A stretch of 64,000 nt of DNA from Chrysemys picta bellii (Eukaryota): positions 12,524,001 through 12,588,000 of the forward strand of contig NC_088811.1 in the NCBI RefSeq assembly GCF_011386835.1, read 5' to 3'. Below, piece after piece: positions 17,147 through 49,991 of this stretch. The stretch's first letter is position 1; each line of letters begins with the position of its first letter. The notes under the pieces were generated by a model. It was not told the DNA's origin, did not search any database, and saw nothing but the letters and a program-made list of their open reading frames with translations. The translations under genes were made by a program, and so were the position numbers.

Positions 17147-19683
17147 CTGAAGGAGAGAGAAAAAGACAAGTAAATGTAGGGGTGGTACATTTCTTTATTC
17201 TTTGGGGGGTTATTTGTGCTATCGGAGCATAACCTACTGGTGAGCGTGTTACAGATAGGGAACTTTAGCTCAAGTACATCAGCTTCTGCTTTCAGCTCTG
17301 AAGTTCCCTGATTCAATCACCAGTGTGTTGCTCAAACAGTGGTCATCACAATAGCACCTAAAGGTACGGAGAGCGGGATCCCGGTGCGCTAGGTACTATA
17401 AACACACACATGAGACTACAGTCAAGGCAGCTAGAGAGTGGGAGAATTATTATCCCTATTTAACAGAGCGGGAGTTGGGCTACAAAGAGATGAAGTCACT
17501 TGTCACACAGGAAGTCTGTGGCAGAGCCAGGATTTGATGCTAGATCTCCTGAATCCCACCACTCAACAATCCTTGCTCTTAAACACCAGCTGAATCAGAA
17601 CGAATGCAAGGCAGGGTTTTAAAGGGTGGATAAAGACAGGAGCAACTTAAGCAGCCATTGGTGCATCAGCAATCCCTTCCCATTGAGAAGCCCGGCAGCA
17701 TCCCTTTTTCCTTTTCCCTCCGGATCCCTTTCCCCCATCCTCCAGCTGGGCTGCTGCGGTGTTAAATGTTTGGGCCCCTCTGTCCTGAACTCATCACAAA
17801 AGAGGATGGAAGCTGGTTCCTTTTTAGTAGCTCATTTAAGCTTCGAGAGGAGCCTTCCCACGGTTTGTGACTAGCTGGGATCGTAAAGTGGTGGGAAGGT
17901 AACACGTCGTACTGTGTGCCGCACGTGATCCTGAACAATGCCAGAGCGTGGCTACTTGAGTAGAATAGCTAGCGCCCGGCTAAGACAGGAGTAAGATGTG
18001 GTGGTGAAGGCATAAATGTTTAAATCCTTGAATCACACAAAGAGCAATGAGGCACTGGAATGGTTTAGAGTGGTTCACCGGGGGCTAACCTTTCATCATT
18101 ACAAAGTGTTATCGGGTGAGATCAGGACCTTGAAGAGGCGAGTTAGCTACTGTGATGACTGTGCAGTCAGTGTAGACAAGGACAATTGTGTTCAGTGCCA
18201 TGCTGGGACTTGGGTGTAACCAGGACTAGCTAACATGATGCTGTACAGGATTTGCCCTGGTCTATGCTGACTGCAAAGTTGTCCGCCTCGTGCTGGTTGA
18301 TCCTTTGAGGCTGGGATCTAACCTAGTAAATTTTGCATTGAGGACGTGCCCCGTGAACGATGTGCTGAAATGAAGAAAAGGCAGCATTTGAGTCTGAATA
18401 GTGAGGGAAACTTACTGGCCCTGATACCTTTTAAATAGCAGACGAGTCTCCCGTGGGAAGAAGAGGTAGAAACTCCCTCAGGTTGGATTGTAAAAACTCG
18501 ACTGAGCAGAATGCTCGATGTTGAAGGGGGACAATGCTGTACTGACCCCCAGGAGATGGGCTCTGATTTCTATGGTCCTTACGGTGGAAGATTCCATTGC
18601 TCTGGAATCAAATGCATCCTTCTTGAAAGGATTTTATCTAGGGTGGTTCTTGTGGCTGGTGTCTGAGTGCACCATTCCACCCGGGTTACGTGTTCTCACT
18701 GCAGCACTTTATGTTAAATTAGGGAACTGACTGCTAGGGACTCAGCCAGAAAAGGACGCAGTCTTCATTATCGTTTCTAAAAATTGAAATTTCCTAAGAG
18801 TTCAGAAAAGACATGTAAGAGAGAGGCTCACTGAAGCTAGAGCCCCCAACCCATTTTAAGTCCCACTGTTTTTTAAATTATCCACCTGGACGCTGCAGCA
18901 CAAGAACAAGAGAGTTGGCGTAGGAGACTCCTCAAAATCCATCATCCATCTTTTAACCTGAACTAGACAGTCCACCTTGACTTCCTGGGAACTCTGCCCA
19001 GACCGTAACATTGCTTCATCCTTACTCTATTGCCCCAGCTGTGCTTGAGTCATCTAGCCATTCCCTCTCCCTCTTACCCGGTAGCTGTTGCATCCAAGTC
19101 CGCTCTGGGCTCCTATTCTATCTATCCGTTGGCCAAAGCAATCCGAGAACCTTCTCATGCTGCGTGGCGAGTTCAGCAGTGCTCGTAGCTTGCTCCTCAG
19201 GGCAGACGGAGGTTTCTCAGGCAGCTCCCAGCTGTTGCGCCCATGGGCCAGGCCTTCTCTTTGCGGTCTAACGTAGTTGCTGTTCCTTGGACCAAGGGGG
19301 CGTGAGGCATCTCCTGGGGCTTCCTCATCCTGTTCCTTCATTTCTTGGGACAGACCTGCCTCGGCTTCTTCTGATGGGAGCTTGTCCTCCAGGCGGTCCA
19401 GCAGGGTCTGAAATGCAGAGAGGCAGCGGGGGAGAGAGCGTTTAACCCTAGAATCGCCCTAGGGGACGGAGTGAGTGGCAAAGCAGTGCACACCTTCCCC
19501 GCTCCCCCAGCCCTTGGTTGCATTGCGTTCTGACAGTGATGCCTGCCACCCTACCTTGAAGTCCGCCAGTTCCGCAGCGGAGGCCGAGCTGTACGCGGGA
19601 TGAGCGTTGGCTCCTCCTTGGGGCTTCATGCTGAACATCAGCAGCAGCGAGAACCGCAGGGCAGCAGCAGTCAACGAGCCCAT
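17141..19683 (-). CDS. NPPA: Atrial natriuretic peptide precursor (154 aa)
   Basis: complement(join(17141-17146,19078-19407,19555-19683)). Signal peptide [17 protein letters not shown]; pro-region ...[14 protein letters not shown]; mature [29 protein letters not shown] with a 17-aa ring. Phase-0 introns, a 1-codon last exon and adjacency to CLCN6, all as in mammalian NPPA. Confidence 0.93.
17444..17556 (-). mobile_element. MIR/CORE-SINE in ANP intron 2
   Basis: attattatccctatttaacag...gaagtcacttgtc...ggcagagccagga. Confidence 0.55.
19078..19407 (-). CDS. NPPA: ANP exon 2 (TLLDRLEDK...GCNSYR)
   Basis: catttcag acceptor; CGG|GTAAGA donor; 110 codons. Confidence 0.95.
19555..19683 (-). CDS. 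NPPA: ANP exon 1 (MGSLT...ELADFK)
   Basis: ATG at 19683; AAG|GTAGG donor. Confidence 0.9.
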
Positions 19684-29230: not shown

Positions 29231-32200
29231 CTGCAAACAAGTCATGAAATAAGAGTTATGGCAGGAAAATGGGGAGACCTTGAATGCACTTTGCTCTGTC
29301 TTTCAGTGCTTGCCATCCTCATCCTAGGTCTGTGCTTTGAAAATCAAATCCCCAAGCTGCGTCCTTTAGTAAAACACAGAAGGTGGTTTTGTTGGGTGAC
29401 CTTTGGCAAACCACTTTGCCTTGTTGTACCTCAGTTTTCCCATGGGAATAGAATGAGACTTTACACTCTGTTATAAAGCACATTAAGATCTATGGATGAA
29501 AATCACTATACAAGAGCTGTTAAATCCTGGGTTAATATAAATTGTCGGGGGGTTAAAGAAAGATGCTTCTCTATGTGACGGTGTCAGAAATCACTCCTAG
29601 GGCTGCTTTTAAAGGACAGTGTCAGTTTAAAAATTATAACTAGGCTTGGCAGGATTCGATTTTTATCGGTAAATGTCAGTAGATGTCAATTTCACCATAC
29701 ACCCAATGGGTTACTTGTGAAACAAACAAAAAATATTGCCAGGGATTAATCATTGAAATTTACAGCTAAGCGAAGTAAGCTGCTGCTTGAACTTAGTAGA
29801 GTTTGATGTAAGGATATTTACTTGATATGTTTTGACATGTGACGTTGACCGCTTGTGTTCCTGACTCTTACAAAGCTTTAACTTTTGAATCTCCGTGTCT
29901 GCTGTCATAACTAATTCTGTTAATTTCCTGTTAATTTCCTGCCACTGAAAATTTAAAGGATAAAACTGCTTAAAAATAAACATCTATATATTTGTTAGAA
30001 TATCAAATTCTGCCAAGCCTAATTATAATAAACTTGCAAAAAAATTATTGTGTTACTAAGAACCACTGTAGATTATTAAAATATGGGCTAGATCCTCAGC
30101 TGGTGTTAATCAGCGTGGCTCTGAGTCAATGAAGCCAGTTTACACCAGCTGAAGATCTGGCTTTGAAAACTGTAAAAATCCTAGGCCATGTGCGCACCAG
30201 GAGCGCCTCGTCTGTATAGGATACTGGTATTTTCCTGTACCAGTAAAGTGCTGGGCTTTTGCAGGCCTAATTTATTCCAACCCGTTCCCCCTCTCTGTCC
30301 TGAGCCATAAAAGCACAGCTTCAGTGAGAGAACTGCATCTGTACCCGTGGCTTTTTCTGGCACAGCCCAGTTGGTCACAAATCACAGCTCATCCCGCCCC
30401 GAGCGACACAGCCATGCCGGCAGAAGTCTGTGGTGTGGCCATCGCCTAAATTACTTCTCCCCATTTCTGCGGTTGGGTTTACACTTTGTACTTCACTCAG
30501 ATCGGTCAATGAAAACAGACCAGTCAGTCTAATTTTCTCAGGTTCTCGTGCCCTAGCCTAATGCTGCAACGATTGGTTTGCAATCACCATTGGCGGGGGT
30601 GGGGAAGTGGTTAAATCCAAATCAAACACTATTTATACTGAGATTTTTCTAAATCTAAACAAATGTCACTAAAACGCTTTTGTTTTAAATGTTTTCCTTT
30701 TTTAAAAGCAAAAGCCAAATTACAGGCCTACACTAACGTGCATCATTTCTTTAAAAGCAAGATGTCTTTGGTAGCAGAAGCATCTCTCTATCCAGGTTTT
30801 TATGCTGTGCCTATCACCGTGGTATCCAAGCACCTTGCCATGTCCCTACGCTATTAATATCACTATTTAAATAAATTTATATAGTGGCACTAATTTGCAT
30901 GATGATGATGTGCAAAAATAGGCTTAGATCCTGCATGTGGCCCCTTGTGCCCATGCAGCTCCCAGCCGAATAGATCCAATGGCAAGATCAGAGCCATAGA
31001 CAAGAAGGTCCTCACTGCATCGAGTCTCAATAAAGGAAGATAAGCTTTGGACAGGACACAGGCCGCCAGTTCAGGAGAAGGATGAGGTGGGTTTCAAGGC
31101 TGGATTTGGAGAAGGGAGCCTGGTTCAAGGGGGCTGTTCTAGACATAGGGGTAGTTGATAAAAGGCCCGAAGATAAGAGCAGGGAAAGGACGGGAAGAGA
31201 GGCTAAGGCAAAAGGGGTGAGATGTGTAATGAGCAGGAAGGAGAGGAGTGGGAATGTGAGCAGATGACGGTGGTTTGACAGGACAGGGATGTCCATCGGG
31301 TTGTCTCTAGGCTGTAAGGTCCATACAGAGATCATCCTTTTGTTCTGAGTTTGCACAGCGCCTAACACAATGGGGTGCTGGTCCATGACTAGGCTTCCTA
31401 GGAGCTACAGTAACCCACATAAATAATCATCCATTTATAATGAGTTGGGTTAGGAGGGACTCACCATTGCAGCCCATTCCGCTCAGAGAGCCGATCCTGT
31501 CAATTCTTCTCCCAAAGCAGCCTGAGTCTCTCATCATCTTGGGAGCTTGCAGCCCCCTCAGTCGCTTGAGGATGGGGTCCCTATAGGACAGAGGGGCGCT
31601 GGGGGCTGGCCTGGGTTCGGGCTCCTGGTCACTGCTGTCATCAAAGAGTTCTGGTGGAGTCTCTTGCTGAGCTTCGGGCTCCTGAAGATCAGGGTTGGAC
31701 TCCAGGGCTTCCATCAGTGAGAACTTGTCCTCCAGCCTCTCCAACAGAGCCTGCGAGAGAAGGGCACAGACTGAAACACTCATCCCTGTGATTTCCCCCT
31801 TGCCTTCCTACCCGCTCAACCTTTGCCTAACCACTGAAAATAGCAGTCGTCCTATTGCCACCGGGCCTGGGGAGACTGTGTGCAGGCTGGGCTGTAGGGT
31901 CACCTCCCCTCTGTCTTCTTTGTCCCACCCAGACCCTACAGTCTTGTTACTCTGCCCCTGTGTGAGCACATACCCGGGGGGTTCGGCAGGGTTGTGCTTG
32001 GGTGGCTAGCCTGAGCCCCCCCACCTCCCCACCACAGCCACACTGCTATTTGTAGTGTCCTGGCTTGAGTAGAGCTAGCACATCTCTGTCTACCCGCACT
32101 GAGAAGCACCCTCCCAGGTGCTGTGTACACATCCCCTAAGATGGAAGGGGTGGTTCACTGCCTCAATGTCCTTTTGGGTCCATCTCTGCTCCAGGTTCTT

Positions 32201-38450: not shown

Positions 38451-39084
38451 AACCGGGCCTGGTGTATGCTGGGCCAGGCTGTGCTGACACTCCACAGCGA
38501 TGCTGAGCGAGCATTTCAACCCAGAGCCCGCCACCGTCCGGTGCCCCGAGGAGCCCAATCTACTCCGCCATGGGGCAATCTAGGGGGGCTTTACCAATGA
38601 GAGAGAAGAGTTTCCCCCCCCCTCAAAAGCACCACTTGCACTGGGGTAAAGCCGGAGTGACTTCATCACCTCTGGGGGGAGCCACTCCCCATTGACCCCA
38701 GTGGAAAATGAGAGCAGAATTGGACCCTCGCGTGGGATGACTTCCTCCAAGTAACCCAGCCCAGTTGTGCAAGTGATGCGTGAGCTTTGCGGGGGCACTT
38801 CGCGTGGGTCAGGAAACTGGTCCCAGGTCCCCAATGCCCCGTCAGAAAGGACTCGCTCCTCGCGGGCCTCCAGAATGAAATGAGCGGTTTATACAAAATA
38901 TTTATTGATACACGCCACGGCTGTCAATTAACCATATATACAACGCGAATTCATCCACCAGCCAAGCCCTGTTCAGGCGTGACACATGTTCCGCTCGGGA
39001 GGGGTCGAGGGCTTCCCACCACGTTACCAGTCCACACAAAAGAGGCTCAAAAATGTCGTGGGAGGCTGGTGGGAAGTTCTAGAT

Positions 39085-39113
39085 TCAGCTTCTCGATCTC
39101 CTCTTCCAGGAAC
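39085..39113 (-). CDS. RNP-like exon 3 coding part (RSWKRRSRS*)
   Basis: tctctttccccccttggttctag acceptor; TGA at 39085-87. Confidence 0.8.
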
Positions 39114-40076
39114 CTAGAACCAAGGGGGGAAAGAGACACAATGAGCACCACGTTCAGACTCTCCGCTTCTCTTCTAGGCTAGAGCAGCTCCTGTCACCAC
39201 GCGGCTGGACAGCTGTCTGCTTGGCCTACGGGTAATATAAGGGAGCTGTAGGGCCCCACTGTTCAACCCTTTCCAACCGGAGCCAAGGCCTGCCCCCCAC
39301 CCCCACCCCCAGACAGGGGATGGGGAAGAATCTTGCAGAGTTGGGTCGGGCCATTGCCAGCCATGCCTCCTAAGGCTGGTGCTGTCTCCTGGCGAGGTGG
39401 GGAAGAGCTCTAGACACGCCGGGGCCGAAGGCAGGCTAAGGGTCTAGCTAAGACCTACGGGCTTTGAAGATGTTGCACCCAAGTCCTGTCTGAGAGCCGA
39501 TCCTCTCGATCCTGGTCCCAAAACACCCAGAGAAGTGTCTCATCCTCCGGGGAGAAGCAAGGAGGTTCCTCCACCGACTCTCCACGGGATCCCGGGGCTG
39601 GAGCTGGGTAGCGGGGCTGCTGTCCGGCTCAGCAAGGTCCCAGCTAGGGTCGTCCTCTTCCGCCCCGTAGTCCAGGCTCTCCAGCTCCAGCGGCTCCCCT
39701 TCCTCCCCCTGAATTTTCTCCTTCAGCAGCTCAAGGAGGTCCTAGAACAAGAGAAGAGAAGACCGTGATCAGCTCCCGCGTAACTGACCAGGGCATCCAG
39801 TCCCTGGGGCGGGGCAGAGGGGGCCACAAACCGGACCTGTCCTCTCTCGGATTGAAAATCACACTGCTCGGAAGGGGGCTCTGCCCCCTTGGCCTGCTTG
39901 TTACGGTGCCTAGTGCTAACACCAGCTCCCCACCCCACCCCTGTACCGCCTCTCCTCACCTGCAGGGACTGGAGCTCCTGGCTGGTGTATTTCCTGGACA
40001 GCGGGTGCCCGCCTGCTGGCCCCCACAGGCTGAGGAGCAGCAGAGCGGCCCAAGAGCACAGGGCTGCGCCTTTCAT
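39085..40076 (-). CDS. RNP/VNP-like natriuretic peptide precursor (142 aa) with long basic C-terminal tail
   Basis: complement(join(39085-39113,39459-39741,39960-40076)). Signal [23 protein letters not shown]; ...[51 protein letters not shown] at 40147-53; AATAAA at 38901-06. Confidence 0.88.
39459..39741 (-). CDS. RNP-like exon 2 (DLLELLKEK...GCNIFKA)
   Basis: ttctcttgttctag acceptor; C|GTAGGT donor (phase 1); hand-translated 94 codons + 1 nt. Confidence 0.92.
39960..40076 (-). CDS. RNP-like exon 1 (MKGAAL...ELQSLQ)
   Basis: ATG at 40076; CAG|GTGAGG donor. Confidence 0.9.
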
Positions 40077-41017
40077 CCTGCCCGGTTCTTGCTCTGCCTC
40101 CAGACCGGAGCTCCTGGGGGTGGGCGTGAACGGCTGCTCCGGCTTCCTTTATAGCCGCCCTTCGCCTCCGGGCGGCTTCCTGCCCGAGCTCGGAATCCGG
40201 GCACTCGGCCCTGATAAAGGAACTGGTTGCAGCCAGTGGCACTCGAGGTTACCCTTTCGGAAGCGGTGTGTCCCCCGCCTGGAGTAGCGGTCGGGAGCCT
40301 GGTCCACTCCAGCAGAGCCCAGCCGCCCTGGGGGATCAGGGCATTTCAAGTGCCTCCTTCGCGGTCCCTCTCTGGGCAGCGCAAGGGAGGCAATGACCGC
40401 GTGGTCTCCCACGTTCCCAGCAGTCGCCATTTGGCTAGCGCTTGATGGATCGCCTGGGATCCCTTCAGTGCCTTGGGCACGTCCTCCTGACCCATGGGAA
40501 ATGATCCATTGCTCACCCGCCGTGAAGGGAGATCAACCCCCCTTCTTGGGCCAGTCTGCAGCCTCCTGTAGCTGGGGGAGGGGAGCAAGGGGGTGCAGAG
40601 CGGGTTTGGAACCGGTGTCTCTGCTCCGCTTGCAGCAGTTCACACCGGCAGCGTTTGTGTCTCTTTCAGTTTGAGCTTTAAAATGAAATGGGAAAACAGA
40701 CACGTGTTAGGGAAATCTCACTGCCAAGGCCTCTCCCACCCCGGCAGACCCTGTGCCACTGACCAGCTCTGCCATGTTCCACTCTGGTCTGGGGGCCATC
40801 GGGGTTAGTTACTTGGCGACTAGAGGTGACCGCCAGTGGTGGCATTAGTTACCAGCTTGTATTACTTTTCCCCATTGGACATACTGTGCTGCCCTGCTTG
40901 GCCACTTGCAAGAGCATCGCCACCGTTCTGTGGGCAGGGATGCTCCCTATTACGTGCCACCCATGGGTGTCTGTGTAACAATCTTTCCATCACGCTATTT
41001 TCAAAGGACTTCAGCTT

Positions 41018-49685: not shown

Positions 49686-49991
49686 TTAGCATCCCAGTCC
49701 GCTCAGGGAGCCAATTCTGTCCAGCTTGACACCAAAACAACCCCTGGACAGGCCCTTTTTGCTCCTGCCTCGGTATCTCCTGGATGACCCCAGAAGATCG
49801 CTGAAGAGCCTCTGGAAAGTACTGTCGCTGATGGGGACCCCCTCGGGCTGGTCCCTGGAGTTTCGGGCCCATTGGAGCTCAGGGTCCTGTTGGTCAAAGG
49901 CACCTGTTGGGATCATGTCTTCTCGCTCTTGGTCCATCTCCTCTGAGGCCAGGGGATGCTCCAGATCTTCATCTAACAGTCTGGACAGGCT
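49686..49991 (-). CDS. CNP3: CNP3 exon 2 ([10 protein letters not shown]...GLGC*)
   Basis: tgtctttcag acceptor; TAA at 49686-88. Confidence 0.95.

What the first reader, a model, noticed from the sequence alone, without database searches (positions are those of the whole stretch)
39085..40153. Third cardiac-type hormone with a 14-residue basic tail: possible tetrapod VNP/RNP ortholog
Seen: predicted mature peptide (R)[37 protein letters not shown], with a tail of 14 aa versus 5 (ANP), 6 (BNP) and 0 (CNP3). Recalled, to be verified: eel VNP is [36 protein letters not shown], with the same CFGTR ring start and a 14-aa Lys-rich tail; chicken RNP was described as unassignable and lies in this cluster. 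Inference: this gene may link avian RNP to fish VNP, i.e. VNP was not lost in tetrapods.
Basis: partly seen in the sequence, partly recalled or inferred. Interest (0 to 1): 0.85.

Follow-up and report, generated by a model that had tools for sequence, protein, structure and literature searches.

The report
Turtle renal natriuretic peptide (RNP) gene
This is an expressed turtle hormone gene, the counterpart of the chicken "renal natriuretic peptide"; it lies where ray-finned fish keep their ventricular natriuretic peptide gene, which supports an already published idea that the two are the same old gene.

Summary
A three-exon gene on the minus strand (CDS 40076-39960, 39741-39459, 39113-39085) encodes a 142-residue natriuretic-peptide precursor. 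It ends in the ring [17 protein letters not shown] and the 14-residue tail [14 protein letters not shown]. Both splice joints, a poly(A) end and the 5' end appear in transcript-like contigs from four studies.

The gene is the turtle ortholog of chicken renal natriuretic peptide (RNP). The two share 24 of 29 mature-region residues and the same slot between CNP3 and BNP. Relatives occur in birds, alligator, turtles and squamates, and turtle gene models with the same tail are already in NCBI.

The link to fish VNP is likely but not proven, at about 0.6. Eel and sturgeon have the order CNP3-VNP-BNP-ANP, matching the turtle order CNP3-X-BNP-ANP. RNP and VNP also share the intron-2 position, a Glu in the ring and a tail of 12-14 residues.

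Trees cannot place RNP: it is sister to VNP with only 67/78 support, and the alternatives are not rejected. They do reject a sauropsid-only duplication of ANP (p 0.013) and marginally one of BNP (p 0.038).

As I recall it, the RNP-from-VNP idea was published for chicken in 2007. I therefore rate this a new member of a known kind, of modest interest. The scan had also noted the four-gene array on this window.

The parts
40148..40153 (-). TATAAA box, about 30 bases upstream of the observed 5' ends of the transcript
   Evidence: Sequence. Contigs end at 40110-40118.
39960..40118 (-). Exon 1: 5'UTR plus CDS 40076-39960. The CDS is 39 codons: signal peptide and start of the prosegment, phase 0.
   Evidence: Translation. 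Joint 39960|39741 in 4 runs.
39742..39959 (-). Intron 1 (GT..AG on the minus strand)
   Evidence: Joint 'skips 218' in four runs.
39459..39741 (-). Exon 2: prosegment, basic processing site RRMR, ring, and the first five tail residues plus one base
   Evidence: Translation. Pfam PF00212 at 40.6 bits.
39475..39525 (-). 17-residue disulfide ring [17 protein letters not shown]
   Evidence: Best solved relatives are ANP chains, E 2.7e-7.
39114..39458 (-). Intron 2, in phase 1 inside tail codon 6. A minor share of contigs retains it, which would give the 8-residue tail NIFKARRS.
   Evidence: Joint 'skips 345' in four runs at depth 79-1109. Unspliced contigs have depth 8-18.
38881..39113 (-). Exon 3: the last 8 and 2/3 codons, giving (R)SWKRRSRS, then stop TGA at 39087-39085 and the 3'UTR
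   Evidence: Poly(A) run joined at 38881 in run X1.
38901..38906 (-). AATAAA polyadenylation signal, about 20 bases before the poly(A) site
49689..49739 (-). Ring of the upstream neighbour CNP3 ([17 protein letters not shown], followed by a stop)
31469..31519 (-). Ring of the downstream neighbour BNP ([25 protein letters not shown])
19090..19140 (-). Ring of ANP ([21 protein letters not shown]), the last gene of the array
   Evidence: Transcript-like holders.

Best explanation
The gene is the turtle ortholog of chicken renal natriuretic peptide (RNP). It is transcribed from a TATA promoter, spliced from three exons and polyadenylated. It encodes a 142-residue prepro-hormone with a signal peptide, an acidic prosegment, a basic processing site and a C-terminal peptide. 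[quoted passage not shown] These steps are inferred: signal peptidase cuts near GG|HP. A furin- or corin-type protease cuts at the conserved R-x-x-R just before HFSG (or after SPR), giving a peptide of about 35-38 residues. The peptide then activates a guanylyl-cyclase natriuretic peptide receptor, most likely NPR-A, and raises cGMP, as is reported for synthetic chicken RNP. In evolutionary terms it is an old fourth member of the CNP3/cardiac cluster. It is present throughout sauropsids and sits in the slot held by VNP in ray-finned fish. It is therefore most likely (about 0.6) the tetrapod descendant of VNP. The confidence given below is for the RNP-ortholog and hormone-gene part of this statement.
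For: Gene model and expression: splice joints, poly(A) end and 5' ends in contigs of four runs from four studies; 14 transcript-like holders. Family: Pfam ANP at 40.6 bits. All ring residues that are constant in ANP are present except Asp to Glu. The tail begins N-I-F-K like ANP's N-S-F-R. RNP orthology: chicken RNP P0048 matches the turtle/bird profile at E 5e-54 and shares 24 of 29 mature-region residues. The tails are NHYKARFWRRRRS in chicken and [14 protein letters not shown] here. The donor GCC C|GTAGGT is the same in turtle, chicken and skink. The RNP clade has 97-100% support. Slot: CNP3-RNP-BNP in chicken and skink, RNP-BNP in alligator, and CNP3-X-BNP-ANP here. VNP link: the order is CNP3-VNP-BNP-ANP in eel and sturgeon, and VNP-BNP in bichir. 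Intron 2 is in phase 1 in tail codon 6 in VNP of eel, bichir and sturgeon and in RNP. Glu at ring position 7 occurs in 103/104 RNP and 7/11 VNP, against 0/22 ANP and 1/25 BNP. Tails are 12-14 residues in both. With 11 VNPs, the best tree makes RNP sister to VNP. A sauropsid-only duplication of ANP (p 0.013) or BNP (p 0.038) is rejected.
Against: The RNP+VNP branch is weak (67/78). With fewer VNPs, RNP grouped with the ANPs (96/82). RNP with tetrapod ANP costs only 1.75 log-likelihood units (p 0.37) and RNP with tetrapod BNP 3.7 (p 0.21). Profile scores of RNP against ANP, BNP and VNP are about equal. RNP lacks the VNP Trp in the ring (it has Gln, as tetrapod ANP does) and the KK[KR]IFGN end. 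The region before the ring (SPR-x-MR-x-FS) resembles turtle ANP. Sturgeon ANP also appears to have its donor in phase 1 in codon 6, so that character may be ancestral rather than shared-derived. A tandem duplicate of BNP would also land directly upstream of BNP. No occupant of the slot was found in frog or echidna within 10 kb, and none in lungfish or amphibian proteins, so there is no intermediate form. Receptor, processing sites and tissue were not tested here.
Confidence: 0.9

Rival explanations
1. RNP is an old paralog but not VNP's descendant. VNP was lost in the lobe-finned or tetrapod stem. RNP then arose before the amniote radiation by tandem duplication of BNP (which would land directly upstream of BNP) or of ANP, and later diverged.
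For: Trees do not reject RNP with tetrapod ANP (p 0.37) or with tetrapod BNP (p 0.21). The first tree joined RNP to the ANPs (96/82). Profile scores are slightly highest for tetrapod BNP and ANP. RNP shares Gln at ring position 12 and the SPR..FS flank with tetrapod ANP. It lacks the VNP ring Trp and the IFGN tail.
Against: This needs one more gain and one more loss than simple retention. The slot, the orientation, the intron phase and codon, the ring Glu and the tail length would all be coincidences. With better VNP sampling the best tree pairs RNP with VNP.
Confidence: 0.3
2. RNP is a recent, sauropsid-specific duplicate of ANP or BNP that evolved fast.
For: It has been found only in sauropsids so far. 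Automatic annotation mostly names it 'natriuretic peptides A-like' or 'B-like'.
Against: Holding RNP together with sauropsid ANP costs 30.1 log-likelihood units (p-AU 0.013). Holding it with sauropsid BNP costs 32.7 (p-AU 0.038). The intron-2 position differs from amniote ANP (phase 0 after codon 4) and from amniote BNP (phase 1 in codon 2).
Confidence: 0.05
3. The 14-residue tail is not the real product. The main mRNA keeps intron 2 or uses another acceptor, giving a short tail (NIFKARRS or NIFKAP).
For: Contigs that run through intron 2 exist in three runs. Another AG acceptor is available in the intron.
Against: The 39459|39113 joint is the only well-supported one. It occurs in all four runs at depth 79-1109, against 8-18 for unspliced contigs. 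The exon-3 peptide x-W-basic-basic-x-R-S is conserved from turtles to birds, alligator and lizards.
Confidence: 0.03

Closest known systems
Chicken renal natriuretic peptide (RNP; P0048, 'renal natriuretic peptide precursor [Gallus gallus]')
   Same: Three-exon gene between CNP3 and BNP in the same orientation. The ring is CFGTR[IM]ERIG[SA]QTGLGC. The tail is N-x-[FY]-K-A-R-x-W followed by a basic run ending in S. The intron-2 donor is the same. The mature regions share 24 of 29 residues.
   Different: The tail has 14 residues rather than 13. The processing site is SPRRMR rather than SYGRR. In the turtle, RNP coexists with an intact ANP gene, which the chicken locus lacks within 10 kb. Tissue and activity are known for chicken only (from my memory of Trajanovska et al. 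2007).
Ventricular natriuretic peptide (VNP) of ray-finned fish (eel ANFV_ANGJA P0130; also sturgeon, bichir, gar, bowfin, salmonids)
   Same: It holds the same slot, CNP3-VNP-BNP-ANP, in the same orientation. Intron 2 is in phase 1 in tail codon 6. The tail is long (12-14 residues) and basic, and is encoded mostly by exon 3. Glu replaces Asp in the ring in most species. Eel VNP has CFGTR.
   Different: VNP has Trp at ring position 12 (IGSWSGLGC); RNP has Gln. The VNP tail ends KK[KR]IFGN; the RNP tail ends W-K/R-R-x-R-S. VNP has KSFNS before the ring; RNP has RHFSG. They share only 16-17 of 29 mature-region residues, no more than RNP shares with ANP.
Atrial natriuretic peptide (ANP) of tetrapods
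   Same: The ring shares IG[AS]Q[ST]GLGC. The tail starts N-x-aromatic-basic. In turtle ANP there is an SPR-x-MR-x-FS motif before the ring. The two share 18 of 27 residues. ANP gives the best matches among solved structures.
   Different: ANP is a separate, intact gene 20 kb away in the same array. Its tail is short, and intron 2 is in phase 0 after tail codon 4. The ANP clade excludes RNP with 100% support.

Membership tests
Natriuretic peptide family (Pfam PF00212) | 17-residue ring closed by two Cys, with CFG...[DE]RI...GLGC | tested here: met
   The ring is [17 protein letters not shown]. Pfam scores 40.6 bits against a cut-off of 27.
Natriuretic peptide family (Pfam PF00212) | Secreted prepro-hormone with the active peptide at the C-terminus, behind a basic cleavage site | tested here: met
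   The N-terminus is hydrophobic, the prosegment is acidic, and R-x-x-R before HFSG is invariant in the family alignment. Cleavage itself was not tested.
Natriuretic peptide family (Pfam PF00212) | Raises cGMP through NPR-A or NPR-B | not testable with these tools
   This needs receptor assays.
Sauropsid RNP orthologs (chicken renal natriuretic peptide) | Lies between CNP3 and BNP, co-oriented with them | tested here: met
   The window order is CNP3 49.7 kb, X 39.5 kb, BNP 31.5 kb. The same order is seen in chicken L001, skink L005 and alligator L008.
Sauropsid RNP orthologs (chicken renal natriuretic peptide) | Ring with T-R-x-E-R-I-G-x-Q-T-G-L-G-C, and a 13-14 residue tail N-x-[FY]-K-A-R-x-W followed by a basic run | tested here: met
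   The clade has 97-100% support.
Sauropsid RNP orthologs (chicken renal natriuretic peptide) | Expressed mainly in kidney | tested here: inconclusive
   Tissue labels are coded. The samples that hold the RNP transcript are mostly not those that hold the ANP transcript within the same studies. Run X12 holds 0.31 of the RNP words and 0.00 of the ANP words. This hints at a non-atrial source.
Fish VNP | Gene between CNP3 and BNP in the cluster | tested here: met
   Seen in eel L002 and sturgeon L004, and in part in bichir L003.
Fish VNP | Intron 2 in phase 1 within tail codon 6, with a long basic tail of 12-14 residues | tested here: met
   Sturgeon ANP may share the phase and codon, so this character discriminates only weakly.
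Fish VNP | Sequence hallmarks: Trp in the ring (IGSWSGLGC) and the tail end KK[KR]IFGN | tested here: not met
   RNP has Gln at that ring position, and its tail ends WKRRSRS.
Fish VNP | Forms one clade with VNP in a tree | tested here: inconclusive
   RNP is sister to VNP at 67/78. In an earlier tree it grouped with ANP. AU tests reject neither placement.

The most novel reading that the evidence does not exclude
RNP is the direct descendant of VNP. On this reading the full ancestral bony-vertebrate set CNP3-VNP-BNP-ANP survives intact in turtles (and, it seems, in crocodilians and some lizards). VNP was then lost separately in amphibians and mammals rather than once in tetrapods, and the 12-14 residue basic tail is a feature conserved for more than 400 million years with a function of its own.
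Probability: 0.55. Interest if true: 0.45.

Novelty: new member of a known kind. Interest (0 to 1): 0.33.

Why it matters
It settles what the third 'cardiac-type' gene in the turtle array is. It also gives the cleanest tetrapod picture of the ancestral natriuretic peptide cluster, with all four genes intact, in the same order and orientation as in eel and sturgeon. Because ANP and RNP sit side by side in one genome, RNP cannot be a displaced ANP. This strengthens, but does not prove, the old proposal that avian RNP is the tetrapod VNP. It also gives comparative endocrinologists a reptile in which ANP, BNP and RNP/VNP can be compared on the same receptors. The gene itself is already modelled in other turtle genomes, and its chicken ortholog has been characterised.

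Tried and rejected
1. Sequence trees as the arbiter of VNP orthology. The backbone is unstable: and differ. AU tests reject neither RNP+VNP, RNP+tetrapod ANP nor RNP+tetrapod BNP.

2. Group-profile scoring of RNP against ANP, BNP, VNP and CNP3, done for the full precursor, the prosegment alone and the mature peptide alone. The scores were about equal.

3. The VNP-profile search. Its best non-VNP hit looked at first like a bird RNP, but it is a bird BNP (P0262). It gives no support.

4. Intron phase as a VNP-specific mark. This was weakened because sturgeon ANP appears to share phase 1 in codon 6.

5. A search for an occupant of the slot in frog (L006) and echidna (L007). No ring-coding sequence lies within 10 kb upstream of BNP. 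The flank is too short to show absence.

6. Literature. Trajanovska et al. 2007, Takei et al. 2011 and Inoue et al. 2003 are not held. Full-text searches for RNP together with VNP found nothing. What I say about those papers is therefore from memory.

8. Tissue of expression. Run descriptions are coded or blank.

Full report
**1. What is there**

Four natriuretic-peptide rings are encoded in the window, all on the minus strand. In the direction of transcription they are:
- CNP3 at 49689-49739, with no tail.
- The gene in question at 39475-39525.
- BNP at 31469-31519 ([25 protein letters not shown]...).
- ANP at 19090-19140 ([21 protein letters not shown]...).

The gene in question has three coding exons: 40076-39960, 39741-39459 and 39113-39085. 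Joined, they give a 142-residue precursor that ends ...[41 protein letters not shown].

**2. Is the gene model real?**

Fourteen public runs hold 30-55% of the sampled words of the 1.2-kb stretch, which is what a spliced transcript would give. I laid contigs of four runs from four studies on the region.
- All four runs carry the joint 39459|39113, at depth 79-1109.
- All four carry the joint 39960|39741.
- Both introns are GT..AG on the minus strand.
- One 595-base contig (X11) spans all three exons.
- One contig runs into a poly(A) tract at 38881, 20 bases past an AATAAA at 38906-38901.
- The 5' ends lie at 40110-40118, about 30 bases below a TATAAA at 40153-40148.

Contigs that keep intron 2 exist at depth 8-18; they would encode NIFKARRS. 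One caveat: the runs are labelled 'RNA?' by guess. However, spliced contigs with a poly(A) end cannot come from genomic DNA.

**3. What family, and which member**

Pfam ANP matches at 40.6 bits, against a cut-off of 27. The nearest solved peptides are ANP chains.

A database search with exon 2 finds turtle models at 80-93% identity. In Terrapene and Chelonia these models carry the tail SWKRRSRS. They are named 'natriuretic peptides B-like' and, in Gopherus, 'ventricular natriuretic peptide-like'.

A profile of turtle and bird hits retrieves more than 100 sauropsid proteins. Among them is 'renal natriuretic peptide precursor [Gallus gallus]' (P0048, E 5e-54), along with alligator, lizard and snake members.

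Chicken RNP ends [36 protein letters not shown] and shares 24 of 29 mature-region residues with the turtle peptide. The family alignment keeps R-x-x-R before HFSG, the ring, and the Arg and Trp of the tail invariant or nearly so. The exon-2 donor GCC C|GTAGGT is identical in turtle, chicken and skink.

The gene order is:
- CNP3-RNP-BNP in chicken.
- CNP3-RNP-BNP in skink.
- RNP-BNP in alligator.

The RNP clade has 97-100% support in trees. The turtle gene is therefore the RNP ortholog beyond reasonable doubt.

**4. Is RNP the tetrapod VNP?**

Evidence for:

(a) Position. The European eel has CNP3-VNP-BNP-ANP within 10 kb, all on one strand. The sterlet sturgeon has the same order. Bichir shows VNP-BNP. 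The turtle order CNP3-X-BNP-ANP matches gene for gene.

(b) Gene structure. Intron 2 is in phase 1 inside the sixth tail codon in VNP of eel, bichir and sturgeon, and in RNP of turtle, chicken and skink. Turtle ANP has it in phase 0 after codon 4. Amniote BNP has it in phase 1 in codon 2.

(c) Ring Glu. Glu replaces the otherwise constant Asp in 103/104 RNP-family proteins and 7/11 VNPs, against 0/22 ANP and 1/25 BNP.

(d) Tail length. The tail is 12-14 residues in VNP (PMC9133251) and 13-14 in RNP. In both it is basic and encoded mainly by exon 3.

(e) Age of the gene. Forcing RNP to be a sauropsid-only duplicate of ANP or of BNP costs 30-33 log-likelihood units (p-AU 0.013 and 0.038). The gene is therefore older than amniotes.

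Evidence against, or neutral:
- With five VNPs, the tree put RNP with the ANPs (96/82) and VNP with the BNPs.
- With eleven VNPs, it put RNP next to VNP, but only at 67/78.
- AU tests do not reject RNP+VNP in the first set (p 0.18). In the second set they do not reject RNP+tetrapod ANP (p 0.37) or RNP+tetrapod BNP (p 0.21).
- Group-profile scores are about equal.
- RNP lacks VNP's ring Trp and IFGN end, and it shares Gln and the SPR..FS flank with tetrapod ANP.
- Sturgeon ANP seems to have the same donor phase and codon, so point (b) may be an ancestral state.
- A tandem copy of BNP would also land in this slot.
- No intermediate was found in amphibian, lungfish or monotreme data, but the reach of those checks was short.

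I put orthology with VNP at about 0.55-0.6.

**5. How it most likely works**

Shown here: the gene is transcribed, spliced and polyadenylated. It encodes a family member in which every ANP ring residue that is constant in the family is kept, except Asp to Glu. The tail starts N-x-aromatic-basic, as in ANP.

Inferred: the signal peptide is removed. A furin- or corin-type cut follows at the conserved basic site, giving a peptide of about 35-38 residues with one disulfide bond. The peptide binds a guanylyl-cyclase receptor and cGMP rises.

From memory of Trajanovska et al. 2007, not checked here: synthetic chicken RNP raised cGMP in kidney membranes and relaxed aortic rings, and the mRNA was mainly renal.

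A hint on tissue comes from the sequencing runs. Within the same four studies, the samples that hold the RNP transcript are almost all different from those that hold the ANP transcript. Only X7 is shared, and X12 holds 0.31 of the RNP words but 0.00 of the ANP words. Lists are capped per study, so this is only suggestive of a non-atrial source.

**6. Novelty**

The gene model exists in NCBI for several turtles. The chicken ortholog has been cloned and tested. [quoted passage not shown]

This window adds a tetrapod with all four genes intact in the fish order, which rules out RNP being a displaced ANP. The eel and sturgeon gene orders make the positional case explicit.

My verdict is a new member of a known kind, of modest interest.

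Noticed in passing
P0164 / P0231 (Crocodylus porosus, Alligator sinensis 'natriuretic peptides A') and P0146 (Tiliqua scincoides): ANP-type genes exist in crocodilians and a skink alongside RNP. As I recall it, the literature reports that ANP was lost in diapsid reptiles. The crocodilian ring reads CFGQRLDKIAAQSGLGC: the otherwise constant Arg and Gly of DRIG are replaced, so the gene may be decaying or may have changed function.
   Followed up: partly
(runs X1-X14 against X25-X37): Within the same four studies, the samples that hold the RNP transcript and those that hold the ANP transcript are nearly disjoint. This suggests the two neighbouring genes are expressed in different tissues. Tissue names are not available.
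   Followed up: partly
one search hit list: Among the 120 listed relatives of the RNP profile there are dozens of bird orders but no obvious passerine. RNP may be lost or strongly diverged in Passeriformes, or they may simply fall outside the listed hits.
   Followed up: no
P0183 (Protopterus annectens 'natriuretic peptides B-like'): The lungfish peptide has a BNP-like CFGRR ring start, but also Glu (RIERIG) and a 10-residue basic tail, NYSKYRPRKQ. It sits on a long branch at the base of tetrapod BNP. It could bear on the VNP/RNP question.
   Followed up: no
P0211, P0259, P0263 (assemblies of public runs, species unknown): These form a divergent VNP-like group with the ring CFG[SG]RLDRIGTWSGLGC and tail NTM[KR].GKL... 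They fall with VNP but on a long branch.
   Followed up: no
window 39084-39486: Low-depth contigs retain intron 2 in three runs. They would encode an 8-residue tail, NIFKARRS. This may be unprocessed pre-mRNA or a minor isoform.
   Followed up: partly
L006 10808-10858; P0114, P0157, P0158: Frog BNP-type rings read ...DRID... instead of ...DRIG..., a change in a residue that is otherwise constant in the family.
   Followed up: no
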